Virus record (IMG/VR): IMGVR_UViG_3300042562_001598
Span: 124,001-188,000 of that record
Length of the DNA stretch: 64,000 nt
Reading direction: 5' to 3' (one strand)
Part shown: one piece after another, positions 7,873-60,137 of the stretch
Layout: every line of letters begins with the position of its first letter
How positions within the stretch are numbered: the first letter of the stretch is position 1
The notes under the pieces: generated by a model
The model's input: the letters and a program-made list of their open reading frames with translations, nothing else
Databases searched by the model: none
Told to the model about the DNA's origin: nothing
Position numbers and translations under genes: made by a program

Positions 7873-8151
7873 TAAACCAAAAAAAATAAAATTATGTCAA
7901 ATATTTCAATTTTAATTTATTGCATCGCGATTAATTACATTATATTCACAGCAAGTTGTATAATAATGTGTTATGACAAAAAAAGGGATGACTTTTGGAT
8001 GAAAATATCTGTAGTCAGTTTAATGTCCATGATTATAACCTCTTTAATTGGAATTATAGTAGTTTAGAAAATATCCCCAATGTAAATTTATGTTGGGGAT
8101 ATTTATTGTTATAATCTTAAAATAAAATAATTTCGTTATATTTATTAAATT

Positions 8152-9198
8152 ATGAAAAAGAACGCTTTAAAAGAGGAAGTATTACGAATTCACGAACTTA
8201 CTTATGGTAAGAAAATTTTGGAGGAACAAAACTTCCTATCAAAAATATTTGGTGATGATAAAGAAAAGACAAGTAAAGTTGACGACCCAAAAAAGGCTGA
8301 TATTGTAACTTCAGATGTTAAAAAATTCTATCAAAATATTGAGGACGCTATTTCATCGGGTGGATTATCACAACAAAAAATCGGAACGATGAATTTCCAA
8401 AAGGGTGTTGAGTCTATGCAAATTGGTTTAATGTTATTAGGTTATGATTTACCTAAACATGGTGTTGATGGGTTATTTGGTCCTGAAACGGCGAATGCTG
8501 TTGGTAAGTTTATTAGTGATAACTTAAAGGACTCTGTTGACTTAACCAAAGATAGTTCAAAAAAAGTTGAAGCGACACCGGAGATGTTGGGTAAATTATT
8601 AGAAATGTTAGAAACGAAGGGTATTTCTTCTGAAGAACTTAAAAAATATATTGATTCTGTTACTACAGGTGGTGGTGCTAACTTTACTGATTTAGATTTA
8701 TCAACAACTGAAGGATATGAGGCTTATGCTGAAATATGTCAAAAGTTTATAGATAGTAAACAACCAAATTTATTGGGTATTACTGGAACTATGTTGGCTG
8801 ATGGTGCTAAACGAGCTTTTGATAATCGTCATAAGTATGTCCCACCTGAATTAGCCTTGGCTCAATTAGCTGCTGAAGGTGGTATAGGTAATAAAAACGC
8901 TCAAAGTAGACCAATAAGAACTAAAAACCCATTCAATGTTGGAAATGTTGATTCTGGTGGAAATGTTTTCCATGGGGATGTACAAAGTGGTATTAACACT
9001 TATTATGATTTAATAGCTAAAGATTATTTGGTTAAAGGTAAAACCGCTTCAGATTTGGTAAAACAATTTGTTAATAAGAGTGGTAATAGATATGCGACTT
9101 CAGCTTATGAACCATTTATTAATAAACTTGCTGGTGAGGCAAATAGAATTGCTACCCCAATTTATTTAGCAATGTCTAACAAAGAACGAGAAGTTTAA
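8152..9198 (+). CDS. Peptidoglycan-binding domain + lysozyme-superfamily (glucosaminidase-like) hydrolase with leader; possibly virion-associated
   Basis: MQIGLMLLGY..GVDGLFGPETANAV (PG_binding_1-like); LALAQLAAEGG and KNPFNVGN..RYAT (GH73-like). Confidence 0.7.
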   Translation: MKKNALKEEVLRIHELTYGKKILEEQNFLSKIFGDDKEKTSKVDDPKKADIVTSDVKKFYQNIEDAISSGGLSQQKIGTMNFQKGVESMQIGLMLLGYDLPKHGVDGLFGPETANAVGKFISDNLKDSVDLTKDSSKKVEATPEMLGKLLEMLETKGISSEELKKYIDSVTTGGGANFTDLDLSTTEGYEAYAEICQKFIDSKQPNLLGITGTMLADGAKRAFDNRHKYVPPELALAQLAAEGGIGNKNAQSRPIRTKNPFNVGNVDSGGNVFHGDVQSGINTYYDLIAKDYLVKGKTASDLVKQFVNKSGNRYATSAYEPFINKLAGEANRIATPIYLAMSNKEREV

Positions 9199-9299
9199 AT
9201 ATAATTAAAAATAGTTACAATCCCCAATATAATATAAATTTATGTTGGGGATTTGTTTTTATGTTAAAAATTACTTACTTTTGTAAAAAACAAAAACTT

Positions 9300-9761
9300 A
9301 TGAAAAAGATTTATTTATTGTTATTATTGCTTTTCGCATTTTCTATGTCGGGTCAAAAGAAGACTTATAAAAAACCTATTAAACTTGAGGTTGGTGGTGT
9401 TAAAATATCTTATGATAAGGTAAAACACGTAATGACTATTGAAGTTCCGGAGGGGGTTGTATTAACGAATGATTATGATAAGGAGACCAGTGTTAGGTTA
9501 AACAATGAGTTTGTTTTGGACTTGGTTATCAATGGTGAGACTATAACTAGTAATGATGATTTTTTTATGGTTAAAGGGTCACAACAGGGTTATTGGTCTC
9601 ATTATTATAAACTTATACCTTATGGTTGTAAGGAGATTGTTCGGAATCGTAAGTGGGTGATTTATAATATTCAACCTGGTGAATATGTGTTACAGGTTGC
9701 GGATGTATGTTATGGGAAACAATATTCAAATATAAAAACTGGTTCTTTAATAATTCAATAA
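9300..9761 (+). CDS. Secreted hypothetical protein with Bacteroidota-type signal peptide
   Basis: MKKIYLLLLLLFAFSMSGQ signal peptide; TACTTTTG box at 9276-9283. Confidence 0.7.
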   Translation: MKKIYLLLLLLFAFSMSGQKKTYKKPIKLEVGGVKISYDKVKHVMTIEVPEGVVLTNDYDKETSVRLNNEFVLDLVINGETITSNDDFFMVKGSQQGYWSHYYKLIPYGCKEIVRNRKWVIYNIQPGEYVLQVADVCYGKQYSNIKTGSLIIQ

Positions 9762-9771
9762 ATAATAGATT

Positions 9772-12700
9772 ATGGAAAAAAAGATAACATTAGGGAAGGC
9801 AATCAAAATTAAGGTTAAAGATTCGGTATCATCTTATGTGTGGAATAGGTTATATGAAAAATTAGATAAGTTAGTAAGTAATAAAATATATAATTCAACC
9901 ATTCATTTACAAAAAGAATCGGAGGTTTATGAGATGTATTACGCAATATGGTTGTCAATTAGGCGTAAATTATGAAAACAAAGATAGAATTAGGCAAATC
10001 GGTTATGAATGAAGTAAGGAGTTCAGTTAGGCGTTCAGTAAATATTTTAGTGAGTAATTCAGTGTGTGGTTCAGTGAGTAGTTCAGTGGATAGTTCAGTG
10101 AGGAGTATAGTGTGTGGTTCAGTAAATATTTCAGTGTATAATTCAGTATATGATTCAGTGGATAGTTCAGTGTGGAGTTCAGTATCTGATTCAATAAATA
10201 ATAATATATGAAAACAAAGTTAGTCTTGGGGAAACCAGTTAATGGTAATGTGGTTGAATCAGTTAAGAATTCGGTGTGGATTTTAACACATATTTCATTG
10301 TATCGTTCAGTGAATAGTTCAGTATACAATTCAGTGTTTAATTCGGTGTGGCGTCCAAGTTTTATATTATGAAAACAAAGATTAAATTGGGGGAATCGGT
10401 TAGGGTGTTACTGTATAAGTCAATAAGGAGTTCAGTTGATGTTTCACTGATGTTTACAGCGTATGGTTCAGTGCATAAGTCAGTGTGGACTTCAGTTAGG
10501 ACTTCAGTTCATAATCCAACAAATATTAGCATATGAAAACAAAGATAGACCTGGGGGAATCGGTTAAGGGTAAAGTTAGGAGTTCAGTGAGGGATTCAGT
10601 GAGACATTCAATATCCCCTTCAATGTACAATTCAGTTAAAAGTGTTCTGCATAGTGAAATATTTTCATCACTTGAGAATTCTATTAGGCATTCAGTTAGT
10701 AATTCAATCTATTGGACTATAGATAACTTCAATAAACTTTAGATTATGAAAACAAAGGTAGACCTGGGGAAATCAATTAAGGATAAAGTGTATGATTCAG
10801 TACTTAGTTCAGTGAGGAGTTCAGTGAATAGTTCAGTGTATGGTTCAGTTAGTAGTTCAGTGTATGATTCAGTGGGGAGTTCAGTGTATAGTTCAGTTAG
10901 GAATTTAACAAACATTAGATTATGAAAACAAAGATTACATTGGGAGAATCAGTTGAAGATAAGATTTTCCAAATAGTTACTGATGTGATTAGTAAAAAAA
11001 GTTATGACTTGTTAATCAGGGGAGTTTCATCAAATATGTTAAAGGGTGTTTCAGATGGGGTATATGATTACGCCTATAATTCAATATTACCTTCATTGAG
11101 TAGGGAAGTGTGGTTATTAGCGGTCACTAATTCAACAATAAAAAATTATGAAAACAAAGATAGACCTGGGGAAATCGGTTAAGTGTAAAGTGTATGAGTC
11201 ATTGTATTGTTCAGTAAATAGTTCAGTGTTTAGTTCAGTGAGTGGTTCAGAGATGCGTTCCGTTTGGAGTTCAATGAATAGTTCAGTGTGGATGTTAACA
11301 AATTTTAGATTATGAAAACAAAGATTAGATTGGGGAGGTCAGTTAAGGATAAAGTGAGGAGTTCAGTTTGGAATTTAGTTAGTCATTCATTGATGAGTTC
11401 CGTGCATGGTTCAGTGAAAAATCCAGTGTATTTTTCAGTAAGGAGTTCAATTTATGAATCATTAAAAATATAATATGAAAAATTTAGGTAATTCAATTAA
11501 AGATAATGTTGGGGATTTAGTTAAAGTTTCAGTTTGGCGTTCAACGAGTGAATTAATTAATGATTCAACAGGTGGTTTAACAATCCTTTCAACTTGGAAA
11601 ACAACAGGTCTATCATTACGAGATTCAGTTAGTAATTCAATTTATAATCAATTAAGAGTTCTTCAAGATGAAAATTAAAAAATTAGGAAAACCTGTTAAG
11701 CGTAAGTTGTTTAGTTCGGTAAATAATTTAATTTATTATTCAATAGGTGTTAAGCTCTATAAAGATAAGACTAGTAATATCTGGGATTTTGGTTACGAGT
11801 CAGTAAGAAAACCAATTGATAATTCAATAAATTTTAGATTATGAAAACAAAGGTAGGTCTGGGGAAATCAGTTAGTGATAAAGTGAGGAGGTCAGTGGAG
11901 AATTCAATTAAAAGTTCAGTTCGGTGTTCAGTAGATGATTTAGTGAGTAGTTCAGTGAGTTATTCAGTGAGGAGTTCAGTGATGAGTTCAGTGTATTGGC
12001 CAGTGTGTGATTTAGTGTGGAGTTCAGTGAGTATTTCAGTTAATATTTCAGTGTGGCGTTCAGTGAATATTTCAGTACATAATTCAGTAAGGTATTCAGT
12101 GAGTGATTCAATAATAAATAGTATATGAAAACAAAGGTAGACCTGGGTAAATCGGTTAAGGGTGAAGTATGGAATTTAGTTAATCATTCAGTGTATAGTT
12201 CAGTGTATGATTCAGTGAGTTGTTCAGTTAGTAGTTCAGTTATTGATTCAGTGGATGATTCGGTGTGGAGTTCCGTGCATGTTTCAGTTTGGATTTTATT
12301 ATATAGGTCAGTGGATGATTCGGTGTGGAGTTCAGTACATGGTTCAGTTAATAATTCAATAGAGGATAGTATATGAAAACAAAGGTAGACTTGGGAGAAT
12401 CAGTTAAGAATAAACTTAAGAATTCAGTGTGTAGTTCAGTTAGTCAGTCCGTGAGTATTTCATTTACAAGTACAAAATATTATTTAGTGGATAGGTCAGT
12501 CTATACATCACTGAAATGGTCAGTGAATGATTTGGTATGGTTCTCAGTGTATGAAATTATTTGTGATTCAATAGAAGATAAATTATGAAAACGAGGGTAA
12601 AATTAGGAAAATCAGTTAAGAATGAGGTTAAAGAATTAGTGTGTTGTAATGTGAATTTATTTTATTTTTCAGTGGGAAAATTTGTATATGATTTAGCTAG

Positions 12701-13395: not shown

Positions 13396-13453
13396 GGATT
13401 GGATATAACAATTTCTTAACTTAATATAATGTAATTTTTATCTATTTATTTAT

Positions 13454-14874: not shown

Positions 14875-14993
14875 TAACTCTAACATAACAAAATAATTAA
14901 TTCCTCACTTATTAAAAAAGGTGAGGATTTGTTTTTTTATAACATTTTTTTTATTATATTTACTCATCTATTAATCTTAAAACATAAAAAACA

Positions 14994-15206
14994 ATGAAAA
15001 GAGTTATATTATTTTCTTCAACCTTATTTATTCTAACCGCATTAGTCGGAATCGTAATGACCTTAATCTTTGTTATAGCTCCAATTCCACCGGAAGGATT
15101 ATACGCTCAAATTCTAAAGTTTGATTTTATACTATCATTTGCATTTGCAATAATTATGATACTATGTGGTGCGTTTAACGAACTTATGGAAAAGTTAAAC
15201 GAATAA
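14994..15206 (+). CDS. Small two-TM membrane protein
   Basis: Two hydrophobic stretches in 70 aa. Confidence 0.65.
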   Translation: MKRVILFSSTLFILTALVGIVMTLIFVIAPIPPEGLYAQILKFDFILSFAFAIIMILCGAFNELMEKLNE

Positions 15207-15492
15207 AAAAACTTCCTCACTTATTAAAAAAAGGTGGGGAATTATTTTTTTATATAGTATTAAGTTGTATATTTGTTGAAAGAAAAAGTAAATATAAAAT
15301 CACAGAATTATGGAAGTTAAATATTGGGAAGATTGTAGGTCATTAAAAGAAATAACCGATGATGTTAAGGGTATGATATCAAGTGGTGAAATTAATGAAA
15401 TTATTTCATTAACACATAGTTCAATTATCAATGCTGCTTACGGGTTGATAAAGTATTCTGCGATTTTAGTTTATAAAAAAAATAAATAAGTT

Positions 15493-16217
15493 ATGAAAAC
15501 TCAATTTGCACCTGAAGAAATTACATTAGAATTAAAAGCGTTGGGTTTTGATGAGACTTGTTTTGGTTATTATGATGGTACTGGTTATGTAATGATAAAA
15601 GAAATTAAACATTGTGTAATATCCGCACCGACATTCGCTCAAGCGTTTAGATTTTTTAGAGATAAGTATGAGTTATATTATACTATAGAAGGTTCAAAAA
15701 AATATGGGTTTGCTTTTTTTATTTATTATGAAAACGATGATAAAGGTGAATTAAAATCTAAAGAATATTCTACCTACGAAGAAGCTGAACAGGAATGTTT
15801 AATTAAATTAATAGAAATCACTAAAGAAAAGAAATAATGGAAAATCAATTTGTTGGTTATAATGAAGCAAAACAATTAAGTGAGTTAGGTTTCAGTGAAC
15901 AATGTTTTGCTGGTTACTTAAAAGAAGAAAAAACTCTTTGGATTGGATATGTTAGTTCCCAGGGTGGGGAACAATTCAATAGAGAGTATCATATCTTAGC
16001 TCCAACATATTATCAAGCGGTAAAGTTCATCCGGGATAAATACAATTTATGTTACGCAATTGACCCCTACGATGATGGGACTTATGATTACACCATCTTC
16101 AACCCTTACATTACAGATGAGGAAGATTTTGAGGAAGGACCCTACAAAACCTACGAAGAAGCGGAACAGGCTTGTTTAGTCAAGTTGATAGTTATCAGCA
16201 AAGGACTGAAAAAATAA
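15493..16217 (+). CDS. Two paralogous hypothetical proteins (15493..15837, 15837..16217)
   Basis: Shared LGFxExCF, APTxxQAxxFxRDKY and TYEEAEQxCLxKLI motifs. Confidence 0.8.
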
Positions 16218-16306
16218 TAAATAAATTCCTCACTTATTAAAATAAAGGTGGGGAATTATTTTTTTATATGGATTATTAATCTATCTTTGTAAAAAGAAAT
16301 TTAGTT

Positions 16307-16961: not shown

Positions 16962-19086
16962 ATGGATAAAAATGTGTTAGACTGGATTGTTGCAATGGAT
17001 TTTGCACATTATAAAACAGAAGAATTTCCTGATTATAAACCGTCAGGACCATCTCACTGGTACATTAAAGGTTCACCTGAAAGATTTACAAGTGAGGAAC
17101 TTATACAAATCTATAAAGGTGAGATGAATGATAAACTAAGAGAAAATTGGAATTGGGCATTAACAGATAAAAAGAAATAATATTATGGACTTTAGAACAG
17201 AACTAGCAAAATGGGGTTACAATAAAGGTGACTCAATTGATGTTGATATATTGGTTAATGAAATACTACCAAGTTTATTTTCTCAACAAGAAAAAAGTAA
17301 TAATAAGGAAGAAGTTTGGACTATGTGTAATGAACTGGGATATTATTTTATTGGTGGAGATACTGTTGATTTACAAGAGATAATTAAAGAAAAAAATAAG
17401 TTATGACACCAAAAGAAAAAGCGTTAGAATTGATAGAAAAATTCAAAATTAATGATTATGATTGGATTGCACAAGGTAATCTTTATTGTGTAAAACAACA
17501 TGTTTTGATTACTGTTGATGAGATATTATCAATGAAAATAGTCAGAAAAGACGACTTAACTGATGAGTATTGGGAAGCGGTAAAACAAGAAATACAAAAG
17601 TTATGACACCTAAATTTTTAAACAATTATGGTAATCAATTAATGGATAACCTTAAAGAAATAAAACAAAAACCGGAAAAAAGTTATAGTGAACAAGAAGT
17701 AACAGATTTATTAACAATGCAACGAGAAAATTGTTATGTTGCTATATTAGGTGAAACAAGAAATGATGAAATCGCAACAATCGCATTAAACGCTCCTGAA
17801 CCTGGGGGTAGAAACGGAAGTTGGAAAAATAATAAGTTATGAATAATACAGTTTATTTTCAACCACCAGGGATAAGACCACAATATTGTGAAGCTGGTAT
17901 GATTTCAGTTACGGACCCTGATTATATATGGTATTATGATGAACCTTGTAAGATATTAATAAGTGATGTTAAGATTATACCAAAAGAGAATGTTATTTAC
18001 GATAAGAAAAAAAGATTATATATTATTAAAGAGAAATAAGTTATGATACTACTGATAATATTTTTATACATTATACCCGTCATACTTTCTATAATAGTCA
18101 TATCTAATAATTCAGATGAAATGACGGTGGGGGATTTAATAGGTATAGTTTTAATATCTATAATACCAGTAGCTAATATATTCACAGCTTATGTTGGAGG
18201 ATTAATAGCTTTATGTCAATCAAAACAAGTAAATAAGTTTTTAAATAAAAGAATAAAATGAAACAAACAGCTGTAGAATGGTTAGTAGAACAATTATTTG
18301 AATTAAGAAATCCTACTTTAAATCAAATAGAAATAATGAAACAAGCCGAAAAAATGGAAAAGCAACAAATAATTGACGCTCATATAAAAGGTCATAACGC
18401 ACCATCAAGTACAATTAAAAATCACGATGCGGAACAATACTACAACGAGCGATTTAATAAGAAATAAGTTATGGAGTTATATGTGGAAATATTAAAAGTT
18501 ATTTTTTTTACTTTAACGGTATTGGCGATGGGACTTGTTGTTGCTGGATTAATGATAATGTTAATTAAAGAATATAAAAACAAATAAGATTATGAAAAAT
18601 ATATTATCAATAACGGTAGGATTAATATTCACACTTATAAGTTGTGAGAGTAGAGTTACAATTTCTCAATCAGAGTATGATAAATTAATAGGTATTAATA
18701 CTCAAACAAAAAGAACTATTACCTTTCCAGAAGGAAGTGTAGCAAAAAACATGGATTGGTATATAATTCAAGGTTCTGATGGTCATGACTATATGGAGAA
18801 TGGTGATGGAAGTGCTTATATATTAATGCACTACATAGAGTGTGACAAATGTAAAAAGAAATAAATGGAAAAAGAGATAATAAAACGAGGAAATGAAAGT
18901 GGTTATGAAACATTAATCATCCAAGGGAAATGGACCAGTTTGGAATTAACCTCGGTGGATAAAGATGGGGATATTGAGATTGAGTTAAACAATACCGACG
19001 AGAACATATCTCTATACCTTAATCAAAATGAAATAAAAGAGGTTATAGAGTTCTTACAGAAACAAATAATATCCCCATCCAATTAA
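16962..19086 (+). CDS. Cluster of about 10 small hypothetical genes (MTPKEKA-, MKQTAVEWL-type, a lipoprotein, membrane proteins)
   Basis: Tightly packed 60-90 aa ORFs; LISC lipobox in 18592..18864. Confidence 0.65.
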
Positions 19087-19151
19087 AAAAAGGTGGGGAT
19101 TTATTGTTTTTATTACTATTTGTGTTATATATTTGTAAAAAGGGATAAGTT

Positions 19152-19685: not shown

Positions 19686-19741
19686 GGGGCTGGGGATAAC
19701 CTCGTGATAACGACCCGGACCATATGAGAGATAATAAGAAA

Positions 19742-21135: not shown

Positions 21136-22763
21136 ATGAACTTAAACGAAAACATACAGAGAATAAAACAAATGATGGGGGTCATAACTGAAGATAGGTC
21201 ATCAATAAATGTGTTAAGAAGATTACCAAGGGTTAAAAAATTATTAGATGTGATTTTAGAATATTCACATCCTTGTGATTTTGGTAATGTTCAACATTTT
21301 ATTGATGGAATATTATACGATATTGATACTTTTTTAATTGCGTATGAAATGGAAGGTATGTCTTCAGGTGAGATAAAAGAGTTTATTTCAGAATATTTAA
21401 GTGATGATATTGAGAGATATTATTATGATAGTAAAGAAGATTGTTAATATGAACCTACAAGAAAAGATAAGAACCCTATTAAGGGAACAAAGTGAACAAA
21501 AGGTGGAGATTAAACCACCAATATTCTTTAGAAGAAGAGTAACCCAAGATGAAACGGATAAAAACTTCAGACATAGTGTAGTTTATGTAATCAATAATTT
21601 CCGAAAATATCGCAATTTATTCAACTTTAATGATTATGGTGTTGATAAATTCAAACGCGCCGTCATAATTGTCTTAATAGATGAATATAGTGATATACTA
21701 TCAGATAGTGATGATTTCCCTTATGATGAGATGTATGATTATCTATATAACCATTATGAATCTGAAATGGAAGATAGGTATAATGAACTTGTTAATGATT
21801 TGCAGGAGAACATAAATGAATCAACATTCTTTAAAAGAAGAAGTGATATAGAAAAGATAAAAGATTTATTACCATTATTTGTAGATGATGTTTTCTATGA
21901 GTCTGAAAATTTTGAGGACTTCAAATATCAATTAACAATAAGAGCATTAGAATATTATATATGGTTAACCCATAAGTTATCCTGGGACGAACTACCATAT
22001 GAGGAAGAGACAGATTTTGTTAATCAAATAAGTGAAGTATTAAACGATACAATTAAAGAACTTTACAACACCAAGATTTAATATGAACTTAAACGAAAAC
22101 ATACATAGAATAAAATCAATGATGGGGATTAATGAATCCGAAGAGGAGGTATTTTATATATTTAACCCAAAGGATAATAAAATTATAGGGTTTAATATAA
22201 CATCCGAGGACGAGTTAAATAATTTGTTGTATGATGATAACGGACATAATCTTGGTTATGGGTGGGGATTACAAGTAAATAGATTTGATTCCTTAGATGA
22301 CATTCAACAATGGAACCAAGAAAAAATGGGGGATAGAAATACTAAAGAGACTCAAAACTCAAAATATCCTGATTTAAGTTATATCGCATCAAATTTAAGA
22401 AAAATTGATGGATTAGACTATTACACCATTAACAGAGGTAGTTGTTTCAAGTTCGCAAAAGAAATATCTGAATTAGGTTACAATACATTTACGTTCATAT
22501 TCTCAAATGAAGAACAAGAAGTTATACATGTTTATATAAAACTTAATAACAACTTATATTTTGATGCAACCGGTTTCCATTCTAAAAAAGAAATAAAAGA
22601 CGAATACATTAGTGGGGAAGATAATGATATGTATGATTCAGATATATCAGAATTAGACCACTACTGTAGTTTAGATACATATAATACTCTAACAACAATA
22701 CCAATCTCCAATCAATTATGGAAGAAAGTTGTAAGTGTAATTAAAAAATCCTCATCCAATTAA
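21136..22763 (+). CDS. Three leader-tagged acidic hypothetical proteins (21136..21447, 21449..22081, 22083..22763)
   Basis: MNLNENIxRIKxMMG / MNLQEKIRTLLRE leaders; TATTTAT at 21115. Confidence 0.75.
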
Positions 22764-22779
22764 AAAAGGTGGGGATTTT

Positions 22780-23699
22780 ATCTTTATATCAATTATGTAA
22801 TTTGATTATGAACTATATCAACTCAATTCATTTCTCACTGGCGTGAGAACCACTACATTCTTCACTATCGTTCAGAACTCCGTTATTCATTTCGTTAATA
22901 CATTTCATAATCAAATTCTTCAATTAATATCCTAATATTTGACTTTTATATACTATACTCGGATAACAAATGTAAATATACACATTCCCCCCATATAAGA
23001 ACATCCTATAGTAATATATTTATCCCCCCCATATAAGTTCCCTATTCAGAGGGACATATATAAAAGAGATAAGTATTTCGGTTAAGTAATCTGTTTATAG
23101 GGAATATATTATTAATCAATCCTTGATTATTAAGTTATTCTTTAGTAGATTTAATGTGGAATATCGTTTAACCCCTATATAAGTGAATTATTAAATGGGT
23201 TAAAATAATGAGGTATAACCTCATAAAATAACCTGAATGATAATTGGTCTGTGGGTTATGGAATATGTCGTTAAATGGGGGTTAAAATGACCTCTACGAG
23301 GGCTCGTTGAAGATACCATTCTAACACACTACGTGTTTCCACCGCCTATGAACCATAACTATAATTTCTTGCTGGGAAACATAGATAGTAAATAAAGTGG
23401 TCTTTACGGTATCACCAGGGGGAATAAATTGGTCTTTACACTATTGTAACAACCATATTCGGTGGTAATCTGTGGTAGATTATGGTAAGTCTAATAGTCT
23501 GAAATAGTGGTGGGGGGATTATCCCCCATTCAACACTCACCTGACATTCTGACATAATCAAGAAAATTAGCATAAAGTTATTAACAAAATTGGTCTTGTA
23601 GATACCCCCAGGATAAACACTATAATAAATAATGAGTATAAATAACGGGTATAATTTGTACCGATTATAAATAAGTAATAAATAATTAATATAAATAAG
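22780..23699. other. About 0.9-kb non-coding region with short iterated motifs
   Basis: No credible ORF; repeats of aa(g/t)tggtct, cccc(c)atataag and ttaaatggg(gg)ttaaaat. Confidence 0.6.
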
Positions 23700-23987
23700 A
23701 TGGAATATTTGGTTGATGTGCCGGTTAGTGTAAGACATGATGGTCATATATACTTTGTGGAGTATAATGATGGGGGTAATACTGGTGAGTGCATATATGA
23801 ATATGGTGGTGTGGGAAAGAGTGGGAAGATATTGGTTATGACAAGTTGTCGTATGGATGATATTATCTCTGGGGTGAATAGTAGGAAACCGTTAATGGAT
23901 GGGGACTTCTATGGATTATCAATGCACATCCGGGAACATTCACTATGGCAGGTAATGGAATATATTGATAAATATTCCAAGGTATGA
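23700..23987 (+). CDS. Hypothetical protein
   Basis: 95-aa ORF with ATG after an A-rich leader. Confidence 0.5.
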   Translation: MEYLVDVPVSVRHDGHIYFVEYNDGGNTGECIYEYGGVGKSGKILVMTSCRMDDIISGVNSRKPLMDGDFYGLSMHIREHSLWQVMEYIDKYSKV

Positions 23988-26760: not shown

Positions 26761-26780
26761 ATCACTTAACAATTAAACCA

Positions 26781-27990: not shown

Positions 27991-28281
27991 ATGTCAGAAC
28001 AAACGGAACAAAGTGTAAAGACCATTGCGGTATTTGTGAGAGAGTATTATGAAACATCTATTGTTAGAGAGCCTATTGAGTTGAATATTGGGGATTACCC
28101 TGAATTGGAGGGTATGACCCAGGATGAGGCAATTGATTATGTTGAATCTAACGCTTGGGAGATGAAAGCAACCATTGATGATTATGATTCACTTGCTGAC
28201 CAACTCAGTGATATGGATATTCGTAGAGATAAGATTACCAATGAGACCCAAGAGATTAATGCGGTTAAAGAAATGTTTTAA
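27991..28281 (+). CDS. Acidic hypothetical protein
   Basis: 96-aa ORF followed by a terminator. Confidence 0.7.
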   Translation: MSEQTEQSVKTIAVFVREYYETSIVREPIELNIGDYPELEGMTQDEAIDYVESNAWEMKATIDDYDSLADQLSDMDIRRDKITNETQEINAVKEMF

Positions 28282-28287
28282 TTAACT

Positions 28288-28702
28288 CCCCCAATTATTT
28301 TATAGTTGGGGTTTTTTTTATTTTATGATATATTTATATTTAAATAAAATTAAAAAATTAAAAACATGGGAAAAGTAATTAGATTAAGTGAAGACGATTT
28401 AAGTCGTTTGGTTAGAAAAATAATAAGTGAAGCGGTTATTGCTGAATCATTTGATGATGTTGTAAACTATTTAGGTATTACACCTAATGAAAAAGGGAAT
28501 ATAAGTTTTAATTATAACCCACAAACCGGTCTTTATTTGACAAATACTAAAAATAACAGGAATTGTATATTAAAAATTACTCCACCAAAAACTCAACCAA
28601 CTCAACCGGTACGATAAAAAAATATATATTATTTACACCCCCAATTATTTTATATAGTTGGGGTTTTTTTTATTTTATGATATATTTATATTTAAATAAA
28701 AT
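28288..28702 (+). repeat. ~63-bp direct repeat (terminator + TATTTAT motif) flanking 28366..28617
   Basis: cccccaattattttata(ta)gttggggttttttttattttatgatatatttatatttaaataaaat at 28288 and 28638. Confidence 0.88.
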
Positions 28703-29027
28703 AATTAAATTATTAAATATGAAAAAAGTAATAAGATTAACTGAATCCGATTTGATGAGGATTGTTAGAAGAGTGATTAAAGAGAATAACGCACCTGAAA
28801 GATATGTTATAGATATTGAAACGGGTAAAATGGTTGGAACACATCAATATGGTGTTGGTTTTACTGTAAATAAAATTGGTGAGAGAATGGGTTATGAATC
28901 AGACCCTGTTAGTATCCCTGATGGAACAAAGATGGAAGATAATGATAACTCCCCTATGAGAATGGACAGATTTAATGATAGAGCTGAAATGCCTCGTATG
29001 AGAAGGTATAATGATTCACTTGAATAA
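28366..29027 (+). CDS. Two leader-tagged hypothetical proteins (28366..28617, 28719..29027)
   Basis: MGKVIRLSEDDL / MKKVIRLTESDL leaders. Confidence 0.75.
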
Positions 29028-29640: not shown

Positions 29641-29749
29641 TTATATTGGGGGGAAGATAATTTATTATATACCCCGGACTCGTTCCACTCGCAAAGAATC
29701 CCCGGCCCTTTTTTTGGATATCGGCATATTTATATTAATATAATAGATT

Positions 29750-30430: not shown

Positions 30431-30571
30431 AATAATAAACCCCCTTGATTGGGGGTTTTTTTATGTTTTGTATCGCCGTAGTGAGGTTAAACCTCACAAA
30501 ACAACTATGAAAGATAACATTTTGTTGAAAAATAAAATAATAAACCCCCTTGATTGGGGGTTTTTTATGTT
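30425..30571 (+). repeat. Duplicated terminator (~42 bp) enclosing a ~60-bp spacer
   Basis: aataaaa(a)taataaacccccttgattgggggttttttatgtt twice. Confidence 0.88.
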
Positions 30572-30639
30572 CATTATTTTTATTTGTTTAAGTATCTGAA
30601 CTTTTTTATAAATTGAACATATTTATAATAAAAGCTATT

Positions 30640-31083
30640 ATGAAAAAATGTACAAAATGTGGTGAAACTAAAGAATCGTGTAATTTTAGACCAAGAGGTA
30701 AAAGTTTGTTTTCCTGGTGTAAAAAATGTGAGTCAATTGGTAATTATGCAAGAGCTAAAGCGAAATATGTCCCAAAACCAATAAAACCTAAAGTCTTTAA
30801 GAGTGTTGAGGAAATAAGAATCGCGGCTAAGAAAAGAATGTTAAAGCACCGATATGGCATTACTTTAGCACAATATGAAGATATGTATACTAATCAAAAT
30901 GGGAAATGTGGTATATGTAAAAAAGACTATCATTTAGGAGGTTCAAAAGGGTTATTTGTTGACCATAACCATAAAACTATGGAAGTTAGAGGATTACTTT
31001 GTAGAAATTGTAATTCAGCTATTGGTCAATTATATGAGTGTAAAGATATACTAAATGAAGCTATCAAATATTTAGACCTTTAA
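30640..31083 (+). CDS. Endonuclease VII-like (His-Me finger) nuclease, probable free-standing homing endonuclease
   Basis: CTKC..CKKC N-terminal Zn motif; YGITLAQYEDM..QNGKCGIC; VDHNH; VRGLLCRNCNSAIG. Confidence 0.88.
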   Translation: MKKCTKCGETKESCNFRPRGKSLFSWCKKCESIGNYARAKAKYVPKPIKPKVFKSVEEIRIAAKKRMLKHRYGITLAQYEDMYTNQNGKCGICKKDYHLGGSKGLFVDHNHKTMEVRGLLCRNCNSAIGQLYECKDILNEAIKYLDL

Positions 31084-31183
31084 CGAAATACATACTTCAT
31101 AAATGTTAAACATAAAGAAGATAATTTCTTATGTACCCCGAACTCCCTCCGGTCGCGAGAAATCCCCAGCCCCTTTTTTGGTA

Positions 31184-47455: not shown

Positions 47456-49012
47456 ATGACGACACAGACCTTAAAAGAATTGATAGAAGTTGAATTTGAT
47501 AGATGTGAAACTATTTCAGAATTCAAAACAAATGTTTTTAGATTAATTGATTTATATGGAAAAGATGTTACAACCACTTTTCCAGGAAGTATTACTTTCC
47601 CTACACCAACAGAACCTGACGAAGTAAAATACGGAACAATATGTTCTTGTAACCCACTAAATGGTGGTAGTGGTATATGTGGTTGTGTAATGGGTAATAA
47701 ACTAGTTAAAAACCCTAAAAAATATAACAACACATCCATTACCACAAATATGAATACTTGTTCAACAAATACAAATAACCTATGAATTTTATCTTAGGGT
47801 TAATTTTTGGAATATTAGCACAAATAGTAACCTTCATCCAATTACAGGGTCAGTTTAAGTATCCTTGGATGAAGGATAATCCTATGTTGGTAGCTTTAAT
47901 AGGTGTGCCGTTATCACTCCTTTATATTAAAGCGGTTAGTCATATGGTTGAACATTTCAATGGTGAAATGTGGCCTTCCAGGATTTTAGGTTTTGCCGTA
48001 GGAGTGATAGTTTTCACCATTATGTCTTGGTTATGGTTTAAGGAACCACTAACATTAAAAACCTTAGTTTGTTTAGGTTTGGCGTGTTGTATTTTAGCTA
48101 TTCAATTATTATGGAAATAATTTTCATATAATTTAATTTATATGATATATATCATATAAACCCCCCCCCCTTTATATGACACACGAATACACAATTATTA
48201 CGGAGAGAGTAGCCCCGGATGGTGCTCAAAAATGGGATTTAGTAATCCCTGATGGTCCTCACACAATAACAGAAATTGAGGCTGTTATGTTTAAATTAAA
48301 AGAATACGAAAGTGTTAAATTGGTAACTTGGGAAAAGTACCAACAAATGTTAAAAGAAAGAAAATAAAATGAATCAAGAAGAAATTAAAACAGAAGAAAC
48401 TACAAAAGTTTACAAAAAACCATATAAGAACCATTTTAATAAAATAGTTAAGGAATATGAGAGTGCTACAAATAAAGAGATTTGGGAGGGTATAAGAGAC
48501 AATTTCATCTACGGCTTCCTTGGTGCTGTATTAGTTGTTTTTATCGCCACAAAGTCAGATATTGCAGTTTTATTAGGTTTTTTGGTATATTACTTCTTTT
48601 TAGGTAAGATTGTTAATAGACCAAAATACATTACAGACTTGGGAAAATTGATTGTTTTTCCTATACCGTCAGCCCTGGGAGCGTTTGTAGGGTATAAATT
48701 ATCATATTTTTTAATCAATTTTATGTAATGAAAGGATTTAGTAAAGAAAAAATAGTAACCGACTTAAAACGTATTTTGGATAAATACGAAGGTATGTTAA
48801 TACACGATATCTTTTCTGATATTGAGAATGAGATTCAAGAGTATATTAATGATTATCTAACAACTCACGATGTGTATGTTTCAGACTTCCCAATTGAGTT
48901 TTGTAATAGTAATGGTAAATTTATATTGCAGGCTAATGGTGAATGTCAGGTAATACCCAAGTTATATATAGAAAAAATGGATATTAATGTTGTAATAATA
49001 AAAAACCCTTAA
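47456..49012 (+). CDS. Hypothetical genes including a 4-TM DMT/SMR-like membrane protein (47782..48120) and a multi-TM protein (48369..48728)
   Basis: Hydrophobicity pattern; WFKEPLTLKTLVCLGL resembles DMT C-termini. Confidence 0.6.
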
Positions 49013-49558
49013 GGTTAACTTAAGGGTTTTTCTTTTTAAAAAGTTTTTCATTGTATTTATTATAACACATCACTTAAATATGAAAAAATTTTTAATTACG
49101 GAATCAGAAAAAAAAACTATAAGACAATTATATGGACTAAGTGAACAACAAACAGCTCCGGAATCATCTGTAGACACTACAACAACAGCAATACCACCTA
49201 AACAACAAATGGGGTCAACTCCTGAACAAAGAGCTGCAGCTAAAGAGAGAAATAGGTTAAGATTAGCACCTATTGAAACGGCTCAAAAAACAAAGATACA
49301 AAATTGGATTGATTGTAATAGTAAACCGGGGAGTACACCTTTAACTACTGCTGATTATTGGAAATGGCAAGAAAAAAGAAACAAAGGTAATGATGCTGAC
49401 CCATATGGTGGACAATTAAATACTTCCTCAGCAAACAAAAGAGGAGAAACAAAAGGAAGTTGTAATGCTGATGGTTCGGCCGGAGACACCAAAAAAGGTG
49501 AATCGTTGCAAGATATAAAATAAGAAAAAAACCCTTAAGATTAACTTAAGGGTTTTTT
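49001..49558 (+). repeat. Duplicated terminator flanking 49080..49523
   Basis: aaaaacccttaag(g/a)ttaacttaagggttttt at 49001 and about 49527. Confidence 0.88.
49080..49523 (+). CDS. Leader-tagged hypothetical protein
   Basis: MKKFLITESEKKTIRQLYGLSEQ; TATTTAT at 49054. Confidence 0.72.
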   Translation: MKKFLITESEKKTIRQLYGLSEQQTAPESSVDTTTTAIPPKQQMGSTPEQRAAAKERNRLRLAPIETAQKTKIQNWIDCNSKPGSTPLTTADYWKWQEKRNKGNDADPYGGQLNTSSANKRGETKGSCNADGSAGDTKKGESLQDIK

Positions 49559-49674
49559 GTTTTAATCTTAGGTTCAATACCTTTTGATTTGTAATGTAAG
49601 TTCCAATCTAAAATAGATTGTTTACTTTTTTTTAATATAGTGTGTAGTTTTTTAATTAAATTATTCATATTATC

Positions 49675-57124: not shown

Positions 57125-57133
57125 TAAAAAAAA

Positions 57134-57718
57134 ATGAAAACAAATAAAATCTTATTCTTGGACAACGACGGAGTTCTATGCTTAAGTAATAATTGGGGTG
57201 GTAGAACTAAAAAATGGAATGAGTATAGAAAACTCAATCCTGACCAAGATATGCTTGAGTTAGCACCAGTTGAGGTAAGATTTGATGATTTTGATAAAAA
57301 AGCGGTTAAGGTATTAAACCAGGTATTGGAAGAAACCGGAGCTGAAATCGTTGTTTCCTCTGATTGGAGATTACACGCAAATTTAGAAGAACTCGGAGAA
57401 TATTACCTATCCAAAGGTATCTTAAGAGCCCCAATCGGTGTAACCAAAAGATACTTTAATTGCGATAATCCGGATGAACTTGAATGGAATAGAAGAACAG
57501 CTTACGAACTACAGAGATGTATTGAAGTTAAACAATACCTAACCGACCATCCGGAAGTTACTCATTGGGTTTGTGTTGATGATTTGCAATTGGGTGAGAA
57601 AGATACCTATGGTCATATCCAAAAGTGGGGTTTATCCAATTTTGTTCATACACCCAGGATGGATGAGGGAATCAAACAATCAGGTGTTAAAGAGAAATTA
57701 ATCAAATACTTAAAATAA
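57134..57718 (+). CDS. HAD-superfamily phosphatase (RNA-repair-associated HAD type)
   Basis: LFLDNDGVL, IVVSSDWR, WVCVDD. Confidence 0.85.
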   Translation: MKTNKILFLDNDGVLCLSNNWGGRTKKWNEYRKLNPDQDMLELAPVEVRFDDFDKKAVKVLNQVLEETGAEIVVSSDWRLHANLEELGEYYLSKGILRAPIGVTKRYFNCDNPDELEWNRRTAYELQRCIEVKQYLTDHPEVTHWVCVDDLQLGEKDTYGHIQKWGLSNFVHTPRMDEGIKQSGVKEKLIKYLK

Positions 57719-57719
57719 T

Positions 57720-58181: not shown

Positions 58182-58217
58182 ATTTATTATCTTCAATATT
58201 TATTAATAAAATCACAA

Positions 58218-58571
58218 ATGAAAATAATTATCACCGAAGAACAATACAAACATTTTAATATTGTTAAAAAATCAGATTTAGAGGATTCCGGAACTTGGTC
58301 TGCGGATGTATTAACACATAAAAGTGAAGGTAAAAATATATATACTTATAGTGATGGTGTTTTTACAAAAAGAGAAAAAAAACCATTGGAAAGAGGTGTC
58401 ACTCGTCACGGGGGTAGTAGAACCGAAGTTTTTTATCTATCTGATGAACAAGCGGAACAGGCAAATGATTTAATTAGACAGTCTCGTGAGTTAGAACAAC
58501 AGGCGAAAGAATTACGTCAACAAGCCAAAGAAGTTATACAACAAGAATTTCATTTACCACAAAAACGATAA
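58218..58571 (+). CDS. Leader-tagged hypothetical protein
   Basis: MKIIITEEQY; TATTTAT at 58197. Confidence 0.75.
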   Translation: MKIIITEEQYKHFNIVKKSDLEDSGTWSADVLTHKSEGKNIYTYSDGVFTKREKKPLERGVTRHGGSRTEVFYLSDEQAEQANDLIRQSRELEQQAKELRQQAKEVIQQEFHLPQKR

Positions 58572-58647
58572 ATAAAAACCCCTCCGGTAAAGAGGGGATT
58601 TTTATTGACATATAGTGATTTTTAACCTATTTTTATATAAAAAAAAT

Positions 58648-59517
58648 ATGTGGAATAAAGACGATTATAATAAGTTTCATTTAATTGACATTATTGATGG
58701 TATGAAAAAAATACCTGATAATAGTGTTGATATAGTTCTTAGTGACCCCCCATATAATATTGGTAAAGATTTTGGTATCTGTAAAGATAATATGGAATTA
58801 ACTTCTTATTTGGAATGGTGTGATTTATGGATTGACGAATGTAAACGAATTATAAAACCAACAGGTGTTATTTACATTTACGGGTTCAGTGAAATTTTAG
58901 CACATATTTCAGTAAGGATTGATTTACCCAAAAGATGGTTAATATGGCACTACACCAATAAAACAACACCATCTTATAAGGGGTGGCAGAGAAGTCACGA
59001 GAGTATTTTATATATTTGGAAAGATAAACCAGTGTTTAACAGAGATGCTGTTAGAGTTCCGTATACCGAAACATTCCTAAAAAATTCATCAGGTAAAAAA
59101 AGAACCAATACCGGAACTGCAAGATTTGGTAATTCATCAGATACGGTATACACCGCTCATGAAAATGGTGCGTTACCTAGAGATGTATTTACAGAAATTT
59201 CAACATTAGCCGGAGGTGCTGGTAGAGAAAGATATTTCTTATACAAAGGAGTTGTTTACCCTTCAAAAGAGATTAAGAAATTTCCCGTTGATGAATGTAT
59301 TAAACACCCAACGCAAAAACCTTCTAAATTAACTGAAAAGTTAATAAAAGCATCATTACCGGAGAAAGATGGTGTTGTAGTTATACCTTTTGGAGGTTCA
59401 GGAACTGAAGGTGTTGTGTGTAAAAGAATGGGGGTTGATTTCATCGGATTTGATATTAACGATGAATATATTAAGTTAGCGGAAGGGGCTTTAGAACAAT
59501 ATAAAACAATATATTAA
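58648..59517 (+). CDS. N6A/N4C DNA methyltransferase (beta class)
   Basis: SDPPYN, HPTQKP, IPFGGSGT, FIGFDIN. Confidence 0.93.
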   Translation: MWNKDDYNKFHLIDIIDGMKKIPDNSVDIVLSDPPYNIGKDFGICKDNMELTSYLEWCDLWIDECKRIIKPTGVIYIYGFSEILAHISVRIDLPKRWLIWHYTNKTTPSYKGWQRSHESILYIWKDKPVFNRDAVRVPYTETFLKNSSGKKRTNTGTARFGNSSDTVYTAHENGALPRDVFTEISTLAGGAGRERYFLYKGVVYPSKEIKKFPVDECIKHPTQKPSKLTEKLIKASLPEKDGVVVIPFGGSGTEGVVCKRMGVDFIGFDINDEYIKLAEGALEQYKTIY

Positions 59518-59532
59518 TTTTATTTCATAGCG

Positions 59533-60060
59533 TTAAGAGTTTAACGCTATGAAATTATTTAGTTCTTCAATTCCATTAATAGGTGTTAAGTAATCTTTAA
59601 TTTTACTATAGTCACACCATAACCCTTGACCTCCAGCACCACCTTGTTGTGTTACTAAACCTATAGATTTTAATTCCATAAATTTCTCTTTCCCAATAAC
59701 ATAAACATCTATTGAATTAAAATTGACACCCACCATCAATAAATAATCATAAAGATGGTCTTCCATAATATGTTGCCATTTCCAATCACCACTGGTAACC
59801 CAAAATCTTGCAGATTTAACCTCAAATTTAATCCCAGTTGATTCTTGTAGGATATCATGACCACTTTCAGTTGGTTTATCCAGGGATAAACATTCTTTAA
59901 TAATCCTTTGAGCTTTTTCCCCAAATGATTTATTACCCAATCTTACAATTTTAACAATATCAGGGTGCGCGTTATTCTCAATATAGTAATCTACTTGAGT
60001 TTTAACATTTTTAATAGTGTCAAAAGCATTCGTTTTGTTTACTTGATTTATATCAAACAT
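59533..60060 (-). CDS. Putative restriction endonuclease (PD-(D/E)xK)
   Basis: FGE..GHD..KFEVKSAR..WQH motif; convergent with the MTase. Confidence 0.65.
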   Translation of the reverse strand: MFDINQVNKTNAFDTIKNVKTQVDYYIENNAHPDIVKIVRLGNKSFGEKAQRIIKECLSLDKPTESGHDILQESTGIKFEVKSARFWVTSGDWKWQHIMEDHLYDYLLMVGVNFNSIDVYVIGKEKFMELKSIGLVTQQGGAGGQGLWCDYSKIKDYLTPINGIEELNNFIALNS

Positions 60061-60137
60061 AGTTTATTTATTTTTTATAAAGATACAACTAAATTTAATA
60101 TAAAACAAAAAACCCCTCCGGTAAAGAGGGGATTTTT

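What the first reader, a model, noticed from the sequence alone, without database searches (positions are those of the whole stretch)
8073..60137. Accessory genes repeatedly sit between two copies of the same terminator hairpin: a terminator-anchored cassette gain/loss mechanism
Seen: at least seven different hairpins occur as local direct repeats that bracket genes. 8073-8100/9220-9252 (muramidase); 14899/15213/16226 (three copies); 19071/22748 (six genes); 28288/28638 (one gene); 30425/30531 (~60-bp insert); 49001/49527 (one gene); 58574/60108 (MTase + nuclease). Each pair has its own sequence, so this is not one dispersed repeat. It looks like duplication of whichever terminator was the insertion site. 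Established analogy: promoter-stem-loop cassettes mediate modular shuffling in T4-type phages. Inference: integron-like plasticity without an integrase in the window.
Basis: partly seen in the sequence, partly recalled or inferred. Interest (0 to 1): 0.75.

Follow-up and report, generated by a model that had tools for sequence, protein, structure and literature searches.

The report
Duplicated terminators bracket phage gene cassettes
In the accessory-gene region of a 282-kb freshwater jumbo phage, most terminator hairpins occur as nearby duplicate copies that bracket genes; co-occurring strains show that some of these genes, notably a restriction-modification-like pair, come and go exactly at the duplicated hairpin, which is a variant of cassette shuffling already known from T4-type phages and bacterial restriction-modification systems.

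Summary
All 15 hairpin copies are at the stated coordinates and fold stably. Nine of the ten most similar terminator pairs in the 282-kb genome lie within 8 kb of each other (permutation p <= 5e-5).

Near-identical strains that lack the methyltransferase + nuclease cassette (pair 58574/60108) or the 105-nt unit (pair 30425/30531) keep exactly one hairpin copy. All four combinations of two adjacent indels occur at that hairpin, across flank haplotypes.

The same two-gene module (N6/N4 methyltransferase plus a PD-(D/E)XK restriction-endonuclease-fold protein) sits in two other phages. There it lies between duplications of different, non-hairpin local sequence (39 nt and 19 nt). The hairpin is therefore the duplicated target, not a required site.

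One pair (28288/28638) is an ordinary tandem gene duplication. For pairs 1 and 6 no informative relative was found. At pairs 2 and 3 strains vary only inside the cargo. The genome encodes no integrase, resolvase or Y1 transposase.

Best reading: insertion with long target duplication, followed by homologous recombination at the repeats. This is a private-repeat variant of PeSL shuffling. Interest is moderate.

The parts
8069..8104 (+). P1 hairpin copy 1 (terminator-like), downstream of the 57-aa gene 7894-8067
   Evidence: -19.8 kcal/mol
8152..9198 (+). P1 cargo: 348-aa gene with weak peptidoglycan-binding / endolysin-like hits
   Evidence: Of 64 homologs in other phages tested, only 2 have flanking repeats above the 99% null, and none of the 70 loci shares the window's neighbouring genes
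9219..9253 (+). P1 hairpin copy 2, followed by a TAnnTTTG box
14892..14941 (+). P2 terminator unit T1 (hairpin 14902-14927)
15202..15285 (+). P2 terminator + promoter unit T2 (hairpin 15213-15241)
16216..16299 (+). P2 terminator + promoter unit T3 (hairpin 16224-16257)
19068..19113 (+). P3 unit T4 (hairpin 19071-19100), same family as T1-T3. The stop codon of gene 18865-19086 lies in the loop
19152..22763 (+). P3 cargo: six genes including an N6/N4 methyltransferase (19724-20548). The last gene ends inside hairpin T5
   Evidence: Strain L297 lacks g189 and has g191 replaced
22745..22789 (+). P3 unit T5 (hairpin 22745-22779)
28266..28431 (+). P4 repeat copy 1: hairpin 28289-28311, AT-rich leader and 5' end of gene 28366-28617
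28615..28786 (+). P4 repeat copy 2: hairpin 28639-28663, leader and 5' end of gene 28677-29027, which is paralogous at its N-terminus (tandem duplication)
   Evidence: z = 8.5
29652..29716 (+). Eighth local repeat, copy 1 (no stable fold). A 160-aa gene is inserted at its 5' edge in strains L134/L135
30416..30467 (+). P5 repeat copy 1 (last codons of gene 30065-30430 plus hairpin 30437-30458)
30521..30571 (+). P5 repeat copy 2. The 105-nt unit is absent from strain L139, whose alignment blocks overlap by 52 nt
30640..31083 (+). Endonuclease VII-family gene, a strain-level indel (30583-31111 replaced by 45 nt in L134/L135/L137) with no flanking repeat
31116..31181 (+). Eighth local repeat, copy 2
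48994..49039 (+). P6 repeat copy 1 (hairpin 49001-49031; stop codon of gene 48728-49012 lies inside it)
49080..49523 (+). P6 cargo: 147-aa ORFan
   Evidence: Relatives carry different genes at this junction
49519..49565 (.). P6 repeat copy 2 (bidirectional hairpin 49526-49558)
58218..58571 (+). 117-aa gene (g284), a strain-level indel (58184-58568) bounded by a 6-nt microhomology that abuts the hairpin's 5' edge
58574..58603 (.). P7 hairpin R, copy 1 (30 nt, bidirectional terminator)
58648..59517 (+). Cassette gene 1: N6/N4 (adenine-type) DNA methyltransferase
59522..59555 (.). Internal hairpin between the two convergent cassette genes
59533..60060 (-). Cassette gene 2: 175-aa protein with a PD-(D/E)XK restriction-endonuclease fold
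   Evidence: (invariant D69, E80, K82)
60108..60137 (.). P7 hairpin R, copy 2 (identical 30 nt); terminates the minus-strand gene 60138-60422

Best explanation
The window is the hyperplastic, small-gene region of a jumbo phage. Its short intergenic spacers consist of compact terminator (often terminator + promoter) units.

Most local hairpin pairs are footprints of gene insertions in which the target spacer was duplicated. The duplicated stretch is 30-85 bp, which in so compact a genome means essentially the whole terminator. [quoted passage not shown] Once made, the two copies are portable homology for the phage's general recombination:
- A crossover between the two copies deletes the cassette precisely and leaves one hairpin.
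- A crossover between a copy in one genome and the single copy in a co-infecting relative moves cassettes between backgrounds.

Shown:
- The repeats exist and are locally clustered.
- Presence/absence polymorphisms have exact boundaries at two pairs.
- Four allelic states at one hairpin cut across flank haplotypes.
- The same methyltransferase + restriction-endonuclease-fold module is flanked by three different local duplications in three phages.
- A chimeric terminator-promoter unit occurs in a sibling strain.

Inferred:
- How the primary insertion makes the duplication.
- The direction of each event.
- That P1, P2, P3 and P6 arose in the same way.
For: - Clustering and rarity elsewhere.
- P7 empty sites with one hairpin occur in independent samples and assemblers at 95-99% identity, and the alignment blocks overlap by exactly the 30-nt repeat.
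- States A/B/C/D are all present. L132 (B) and L287 (C) are identical on both flanks, and the window (A) and L284 (C) differ by 0-0.5%. The cassette is 0-0.7% diverged where flanks differ by up to about 4-5%.
- Distant relatives have a single bidirectional terminator at the g282/g287 junction.
- P5: strain L139, otherwise 100% identical, has one copy of the 52-nt unit.
- In L297 an ADP-ribosyltransferase-domain gene sits between two family hairpins, where this phage has another gene.
- L305 carries a chimera of the T15213 hairpin and a T16226-type promoter.
- The module also occurs in L163, flanked by a 39-58-nt repeat that is the 3' end of the neighbouring gene (spacing 1532 versus 1534 nt here). 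In L271 it is flanked by an exact 19-nt repeat that is the 3' end of a RecA-like gene. Flank scores are 60, 49 and 38 against a null maximum of 30.
- Position-equivalent genes are unrelated except at P4.
- No integrase, resolvase or Y1 transposase is encoded.
- Precedents: PMC2853133 and PMC2839356.
Against: - P1 and P6 are unresolved, and P2 and P3 vary only inside their cargo.
- Two of the five contexts of the module have no detectable flanking repeat.
- Three of five strain-level indels in the window (g284, the endonuclease VII gene, a 160-aa gene) lack long repeats. Among relatives only 3 of 15 indels have repeats of 18 nt or more. Long target duplication is therefore not the usual insertion route, which leaves the high density of pairs here only partly explained.
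- Purifying selection on terminators would preserve old repeats preferentially and inflate their share.
- All comparison sequences are metagenome contigs.
- No circle or tandem junction was seen, although only contigs could be examined.
Confidence: 0.6

Rival explanations
1. Tandem segmental duplication followed by divergence or replacement. Gene + terminator units are duplicated head to tail, the region being full of tandem paralog arrays. The coding parts then diverge beyond recognition, while the terminators stay similar because they are functional.
For: P4 is exactly this: the repeat runs about 150 nt past the hairpin into paralogous 5' gene ends, z = 8.5. The pair at window-equivalent 88358/89829 has about 90% identical flanks over 280 nt. 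g175 and g176 inside P2 are paralogs. The window holds large tandem arrays of small genes.
Against: For P1, P2, P3, P6 and P7 the position-equivalent genes show no similarity (z between -0.9 and 2.3), although the repeats are 84-100% identical at the nucleotide level. P7 brackets a self-contained two-gene module that also occurs in unrelated phages. The similarity stops abruptly at the repeat edges.
Confidence: 0.15
2. PeSL-type shuffling as the primary generator. A family of similar terminator-promoter units recombines homologously, making mini-circles that reinsert at other units, so the flanking copies come from recombination rather than from target duplication.
For: The five P2/P3 units share about 60-100 nt of hairpin, promoter box and leader. 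A chimeric unit occurs in L305. The four-state reassortment at hairpin R fits a crossover inside the repeat. The architecture and the location in a hyperplastic region match PeSLs.
Against: Apart from that family, each pair is private and similarity to distant terminators is low. A circle would therefore have no homologous landing site other than its own origin. This cannot explain how the first pair arose, nor the module's non-hairpin duplications in L163 and L271. No circles were observed, and they were not testable.
Confidence: 0.15
3. A dedicated, structure-directed system. Hairpins extruded as cruciforms or folded in single strands are cut by a phage nuclease (for example the endonuclease VII homolog or the cassette's own PD-(D/E)XK nuclease), and cassettes are captured there, in the way attC sites work in integrons.
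For: The P7 repeat coincides exactly with the whole imperfect palindrome including its A and T arms. Local short intergenic repeats are dominated by hairpin-containing ones, while hairpins are only about 7% of DNA not covered by the crude gene calls. An endonuclease VII gene lies in the window. The density of pairs is about 50-100 times that in related phages.
Against: No integrase, resolvase or Y1 transposase is encoded. The other repeats extend 3-120 nt beyond the hairpin on variable sides. The same module duplicated non-hairpin targets elsewhere, and one local pair has no fold. The endonuclease VII gene is itself absent from strains that still show the polymorphisms.
Confidence: 0.07
4. Chance, convergence or artefact. 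Similar terminators arise independently under the same constraints, or the empty alleles are misassemblies across short repeats.
For: Terminators share generic A-tract / G+C stem / T-tract features, and some distant pairs reach similarity 0.6-0.76. Logan unitigs do break at the 30-mer repeat.
Against: The loops are also identical or nearly so, and clustering gives p <= 5e-5. The empty and filled alleles come from different samples and assemblers (k up to 141) and differ by 1-5% in their flanks, so they are distinct strains.
Confidence: 0.03

Closest known systems
PeSL (promoter-early stem-loop) regulatory cassettes of T4-type phages RB49/phi1 (Arbiol et al. 2010, PMC2839356)
   Same: Both are intergenic stem-loop terminators joined to promoters, concentrated in a hyperplastic ORFan-rich region. 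In both, a gene flanked by two units in one genome corresponds to a single unit in the sibling genome, and chimeric units occur. Both give insertion and deletion targeted to tolerated intergenic sites without a site-specific recombinase (versus 28, 89, 94, 108).
   Different: PeSLs are a dispersed family of about 50 copies sharing a sigma-70 consensus over about 100 bp, so any two can recombine. Here the repeats are private local pairs (one family has five members), so they must arise by local duplication at each site. The promoter boxes here are of a different type: TAnnTTTG after 4 of the 15 copies, which I take from memory to be the Bacteroidota -7 type, and an AT-rich motif in others. Mini-circles were shown for PeSLs and could not be tested here.
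Insertion of restriction-modification systems with long target duplication (Nobusato et al. 2000; Furuta et al. 2010, PMC2853133)
   Same: A small methyltransferase + restriction-type nuclease unit with no transposase or integrase is flanked by direct repeats of unique local sequence, with an empty site holding one copy in a related genome. The repeat lengths are variable. As in the H. influenzae cases, the repeats can overlap the 3' end of the neighbouring gene (versus 28, 40, 65, 69).
   Different: Those cases are in bacterial chromosomes; here the hosts are lytic-type phage genomes. The repeat lengths here (30, 39-58 and 19 nt) straddle the authors' >30-bp criterion. Nuclease activity is not shown. 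The nuclease family was not found in reference bacterial genomes. In this window the duplicated target is a transcription terminator, and other, non-RM genes show the same architecture.
Morons of tailed phages (Juhala/Hendrix; cited from my own knowledge, not checked here)
   Same: Autonomous gene units with their own promoter and terminator, inserted between neighbouring genes of a phage genome.
   Different: The moron concept does not involve duplication of the resident terminator, or precise excision at flanking repeats.
Integron gene-cassette arrays
   Same: An array of unrelated small genes is punctuated by imperfect-palindrome sites. Here five related hairpins span 8 kb.
   Different: There is no IntI or any tyrosine recombinase and no conserved attC core. 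The cassettes carry their own promoters and point in both orientations. Movement is explained by general recombination.

Membership tests
PeSL-type regulatory cassettes (Arbiol 2010) | Intergenic unit containing a stable stem-loop that acts as a terminator | tested here: met
   All 15 copies fold at -11.6 to -19.8 kcal/mol with U-runs, directly after stop codons. Termination itself was not assayed.
PeSL-type regulatory cassettes (Arbiol 2010) | The unit includes a strong host-type early promoter | tested here: inconclusive
   A TAnnTTTG box follows 4 of the 15 copies (7 of 46 strong terminators genome-wide, against 5.9% of random 70-mers). The others have a different AT-rich motif. No expression data.
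PeSL-type regulatory cassettes (Arbiol 2010) | Dispersed multi-copy family (about 50 per genome) with a shared consensus, allowing exchange between any units | tested here: not met
   The repeats are private pairs plus one five-member family. Distant terminators are dissimilar.
PeSL-type regulatory cassettes (Arbiol 2010) | Sibling genomes differ by a gene flanked by two units versus one unit | tested here: met
   P7, P5, and the ART gene in L297.
PeSL-type regulatory cassettes (Arbiol 2010) | Mini-circles formed by recombination between flanking units | not testable with these tools
   Only Logan contigs were available, and unitigs break at the 30-mer repeat. The 4 metagenome contigs holding the hairpin show no circle junction.
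[quoted passage not shown] | The insert contains both M and R gene homologs | tested here: met
   M: PF01555 at 8e-40 and NCBIfam adenine methyltransferase at 2e-39. R: an AF2 model (pLDDT 93) whose top PDB matches are all restriction endonucleases (Eco15I, NhoI, PvuII, DpnI, EcoRV; E down to 5e-5, TM 0.45-0.55), an invariant D...ExK motif, and pLM similarity to the Bsp6I family. The two genes are paired in 5 of 6 contexts. Homology is at fold level only; no Pfam/NCBIfam hit and activity untested.
[quoted passage not shown] | Insert shorter than 20 kb with no other mobility gene | tested here: met
   A 1504-nt insert with two genes only. No integrase, resolvase or Y1 transposase in the genome.
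[quoted passage not shown] | Target duplication longer than 30 bp | tested here: inconclusive
   Exactly 30 bp here, 39-58 nt in L163 and 19 nt in L271.
[quoted passage not shown] | A related genome has an empty site with one copy of the repeated sequence | tested here: met
   L132, L130, L314 (state B) and L284, L287, L292, L317 (state C).
Integron | IntI tyrosine recombinase next to the array | tested here: not met
   PF00589 is absent from the whole genome, while the control genomes were positive.
Integron | Promoterless cassettes, each ending in an attC site with conserved core sites | tested here: not met
   The cassettes have their own promoter-like leaders and both orientations. The hairpins share no common core between sets.
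Tandem gene duplication | Genes in equivalent positions of the repeat units are paralogs | tested here: not met
   Met only for P4 (z = 8.5) and the pair outside the window. Not met for P1, P2, P3, P6 and P7.
Homing-endonuclease mobility | A free-standing endonuclease gene present or absent between strains at a fixed site, without target duplication | tested here: met
   This applies to the endonuclease VII gene 30640-31083 and to a LAGLIDADG gene in strain L127. It does not apply to the hairpin-flanked cassettes.

The most novel reading that the evidence does not exclude
Transposase-free cassette capture that is structure-directed. Terminator palindromes are extruded as cruciforms, or stall replication, and are cut by a phage nuclease (the endonuclease VII homolog or the cassette's own PD-(D/E)XK enzyme). 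Each broken end then regenerates the whole palindrome, and incoming DNA is sealed between two complete copies. That would make terminators genuine, self-renewing integration sites and the methyltransferase + nuclease pair an autonomous mobile element of phages. It would explain why the P7 repeat equals the palindrome exactly, and why this region has about 50-100 times more paired terminators than related phages.
Probability: 0.12. Interest if true: 0.8.

Novelty: new variant of a known kind. Interest (0 to 1): 0.55.

Why it matters
How phages gain and lose accessory genes without site-specific recombinases is still largely inferred from static genome comparisons. Here a natural lake population shows a single terminator acting as the pivot for two independent gene indels in all four combinations. 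A restriction-modification-like module appears in three phage lineages, each time with a different duplicated target. This links two ideas so far described separately: PeSL-type cassette shuffling in T4-type phages, and 'insertion with long target duplication' of RM systems in bacteria. It also extends both to an uncultured jumbo phage whose intergenic promoter boxes are of the TAnnTTTG type. Paired near-identical terminators give a simple, searchable signature for recent gene gain in phage genomes. The P7 locus is a concrete place where the insertion mechanism could be dissected.

Tried and rejected
- DNA search of named phages with 10 kb of the window (near mode) and 6 kb (distant mode) found no useful relative.
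- The 80-kb IMG/VR contig is 100% identical, so it is uninformative.
- Read laying could only lay Logan contigs. The k=31 unitigs break exactly at the 30-mer repeat, so contig ends there mean nothing and circles could not be tested. It did reveal the g284 indel.
- Exact-protein look-ups for the flanks of P1, P2, P3, P4 and P6 found only strains that keep the cargo.
- Relatives found with the P1 cargo share no synteny, and only 2 of 64 homologs have flanking repeats above the null.
- The P1 downstream gene and the P6 cargo have no relatives in IMG/VR.
- Relatives found with g172 are syntenic only for g171-g172.
- A census of the P6 hairpin returned only the identical contig.
- Sequence methods failed to name the 175-aa protein: Pfam, PHROGs, NCBIfam, PDB by sequence, GenBank phages, and a scan of bacterial reference genomes. 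Only the fold search and the language-model search did.
- Rfam found nothing in the window or in the 22.7-24.25 kb gap.
- The gene next to the P3 methyltransferase gave no lead.
- Considered and rejected: an integron or IS200-type system, and a general tandem-duplication origin.

Full report
**Context.** The window is bases 124,001-188,000 of a single 282,192-bp virus record, 30% G+C, estimated 96% complete. It comes from lake and freshwater metagenomes. The nearest named relatives are Flavobacterium phages, and only distantly: thymidylate synthase is 58% identical at the amino-acid level. TAnnTTTG boxes downstream of several hairpins match, from my own knowledge, the Bacteroidota -7 promoter type. 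The window is the genome's small-gene region, with a median gene length of 72 aa in the 128-160 kb bin.

**Observation.**
- All 15 copies fold stably.
- The repeats are 30-166 nt long and 83-100% identical, spaced 105-3,677 nt apart.
- A genome-wide scan found 151 terminator-like loci. Of the 10 most similar pairs, 9 lie within 8 kb. Permutation gives a mean of 0.6 and p <= 5e-5.
- In the window 13 of 19 intergenic terminator-like loci are members of such sets, against 2 of 41 elsewhere.
- About 3.0 Mb of loci from related phages hold only four distinct local pairs. Two of these again bracket genes: L186 and L103.

Four corrections apply:
- The hairpins of P2 and P3 are one five-member family. 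Its similarity runs through a promoter box to the next start codon.
- An eighth local repeat pair, 29652-29716 / 31116-31181, occurs only twice in the genome and has no stable fold.
- One more pair lies outside the window.
- The functional labels 'muramidase' and 'nuclease' were weaker than stated, or unverified.

**Is it tandem duplication?** For P4 it is. The repeat continues about 150 nt beyond the hairpin, through the leader and into paralogous 5' gene ends (z = 8.5). The pair outside the window has about 90% identical coding flanks. For P1, P2, P3, P6 and P7 the genes in equivalent positions show no similarity (z from -0.9 to 2.3), and the nucleotide similarity stops at the repeat edges.

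**Strain-level evidence at P7.** Exact-protein look-ups and one metagenome pattern scan recovered many contigs of near-identical strains from different samples and assemblers. Four states exist at P7:
- A: g284-R-cassette-R-g287 (this phage and several contigs).
- B: g284-R-g287 (L132, L130, L314).
- C: g283-R-g287 (L284, L287, L292, L317).
- D: g283-R-cassette-R-g287 (L291, L315).

Here R is the 30-nt hairpin. In the empty alleles the two alignment blocks overlap by exactly R.

The states cut across flank haplotypes:
- L132 (B) and L287 (C) are identical on both flanks.
- The window (A) and L284 (C) differ by 0-0.5%.
- The cassette is 0-0.7% diverged where the flanks differ by up to about 4-5%.

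A single crossover inside R between A and C would give B and D. Distant relatives have one bidirectional terminator at the corresponding g282/g287 junction.

**Other strain-level evidence.**
- P5: strain L139, otherwise 100% identical, has one copy of the 52-nt unit.
- In L297 an ADP-ribosyltransferase-domain gene lies between two family hairpins, where this phage has a different gene.
- L305 carries a chimera of one unit's hairpin and another unit's promoter.
- Not all turnover uses long repeats. The g284 indel has a 6-nt microhomology abutting the hairpin. The endonuclease VII gene and a 160-aa gene are indels without repeats. Among relatives 3 of 15 indels have repeats of 18 nt or more.

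**The P7 cassette is mobile.** Gene 1 is an N6/N4 adenine-type methyltransferase. For gene 2 (175 aa), the evidence is:
- Invariant D69...E80-x-K82 residues.
- A confident model with pLDDT 93.
- Structural matches that are all restriction endonucleases of the PD-(D/E)XK class: Eco15I, NhoI, PvuII, DpnI, EcoRV.
- A language-model match to the Bsp6I family.
- No sequence-profile hit.

The two genes are neighbours in 5 of 6 independent contexts. The module's other contexts are:
- In L163, an unrelated 93-kb phage contig, the module (about 70% aa identity) sits between two copies of a 39-58-nt sequence that is the 3' end of the adjacent gene. The spacing is 1532 nt, against 1534 nt here.
- In L271 it sits between two exact 19-nt copies of the 3' end of a RecA-like gene.
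- The flank-repeat scores are 60, 49 and 38 against a null maximum of 30.
- Two further contexts show no repeat.
- The ends of the module are not conserved, so there is no transposon-like terminus.
- The genome has no integrase, resolvase or Y1 transposase.

**Mechanism.** What is shown:
- Local duplication of the resident spacer accompanies the insertion of this module.
- The repeats mark the exact boundaries of presence/absence alleles.
- Alleles reassort around the hairpin.

What is inferred:
- Insertion happens by an illegitimate, break-repair type event that duplicates 20-85 nt of target. In this compact genome that stretch is the terminator, and where genes abut it is the gene's 3' end.
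- Events that leave every gene with a terminator are the ones that survive.
- The phage's general recombination then uses the repeats for precise loss and for transfer between co-infecting strains.
- P1, P2, P3 and P6 probably share this origin, but that is untested.

**Comparison with known systems.**
- It works like PeSL-mediated modular shuffling (PMC2839356) but fails one defining feature: the units are not a dispersed consensus family.
[quoted passage not shown] There repeats overlapping gene 3' ends are also described, and double-strand breakage is proposed as the common cause.
- It is not an integron.

**Limits.**
- All comparisons rest on metagenome contigs.
- Only contigs, not reads, could be laid, so circles and junction frequencies are unknown.
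- The direction of each event is inferred from distant relatives.
- Nuclease activity is untested.
- The very high density of paired terminators in this one region is only partly explained.

Noticed in passing
window 9772-13395 (+), 24197-26772 (-), 31639-35671 (-): Three long tandem arrays of about 15-20 small (50-95 aa) paralogous genes. Their coding sequence is built from a 12-nt period (TGAAC-type units, that is, tetrapeptide repeats). The arrays differ in gene number between near-identical strains.
   Followed up: partly
window 36894-39323 and 42258-42707: Four to five tandem paralogs of about 200 aa with an internal 60-nt periodicity (repeat families D3/D7/D11).
   Followed up: no
window 29652-29716 and 31116-31181: A C-rich element of about 65 nt ending in a T-run, present only twice in the genome, 1464 nt apart, without a stable fold. 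Both copies have a strain-level gene indel right at their 5' edge (a 160-aa gene in L134/L135; the endonuclease VII gene 30640-31083).
   Followed up: partly
window 5195-7123: A 642-aa C5 DNA methyltransferase interrupted by a Hint/intein domain (Pfam families listed for the identical gene in L157). The region 2619-6692 also holds 840-880-nt tandem repeat units.
   Followed up: no
L127:132-1136 (strain variant, upstream of the homolog of window 57134-57718): A 334-aa LAGLIDADG-type homing endonuclease gene is present in one strain where this phage has other sequence. This is another strain-level indel with no hairpin repeat.
   Followed up: partly
L297:4905-5381: A sibling strain carries an ADP-ribosyltransferase (ART-PolyVal) domain gene in place of window gene 22083-22763, bracketed by two family hairpins.
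   Followed up: partly
window 22790-23700: About 900 nt with no convincing ORF and no Rfam match, directly downstream of hairpin T5. It could be a decayed gene or an unknown RNA.
   Followed up: partly
window 28311-28365, 28663-28676, 30590-30640; genome 208285, 212382, 235268: A second, AT-rich leader motif (ATATTTATAATAAAA... about 20 nt before ATG) recurs at distant sites in the genome. It is possibly a phage-specific promoter class, distinct from the TAnnTTTG boxes.
   Followed up: no
genome 113219-113486 and 113832-114098 (outside the window): A 268-nt direct repeat at 98% identity, 613 nt apart: a very recent tandem duplication without a hairpin.
   Followed up: no
genome about 197,180-198,180 (outside the window): Repeated tRNA T-arm-like sequences suggest a tRNA gene cluster. 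None lies in the window.
   Followed up: no
L113 versus L123 (relatives, between homologs of window genes 60554-61078 and 60138-60422): A 1181-nt insertion bounded by a 35-nt promoter/start-like direct repeat: long target duplication at a non-terminator site in a related phage.
   Followed up: no
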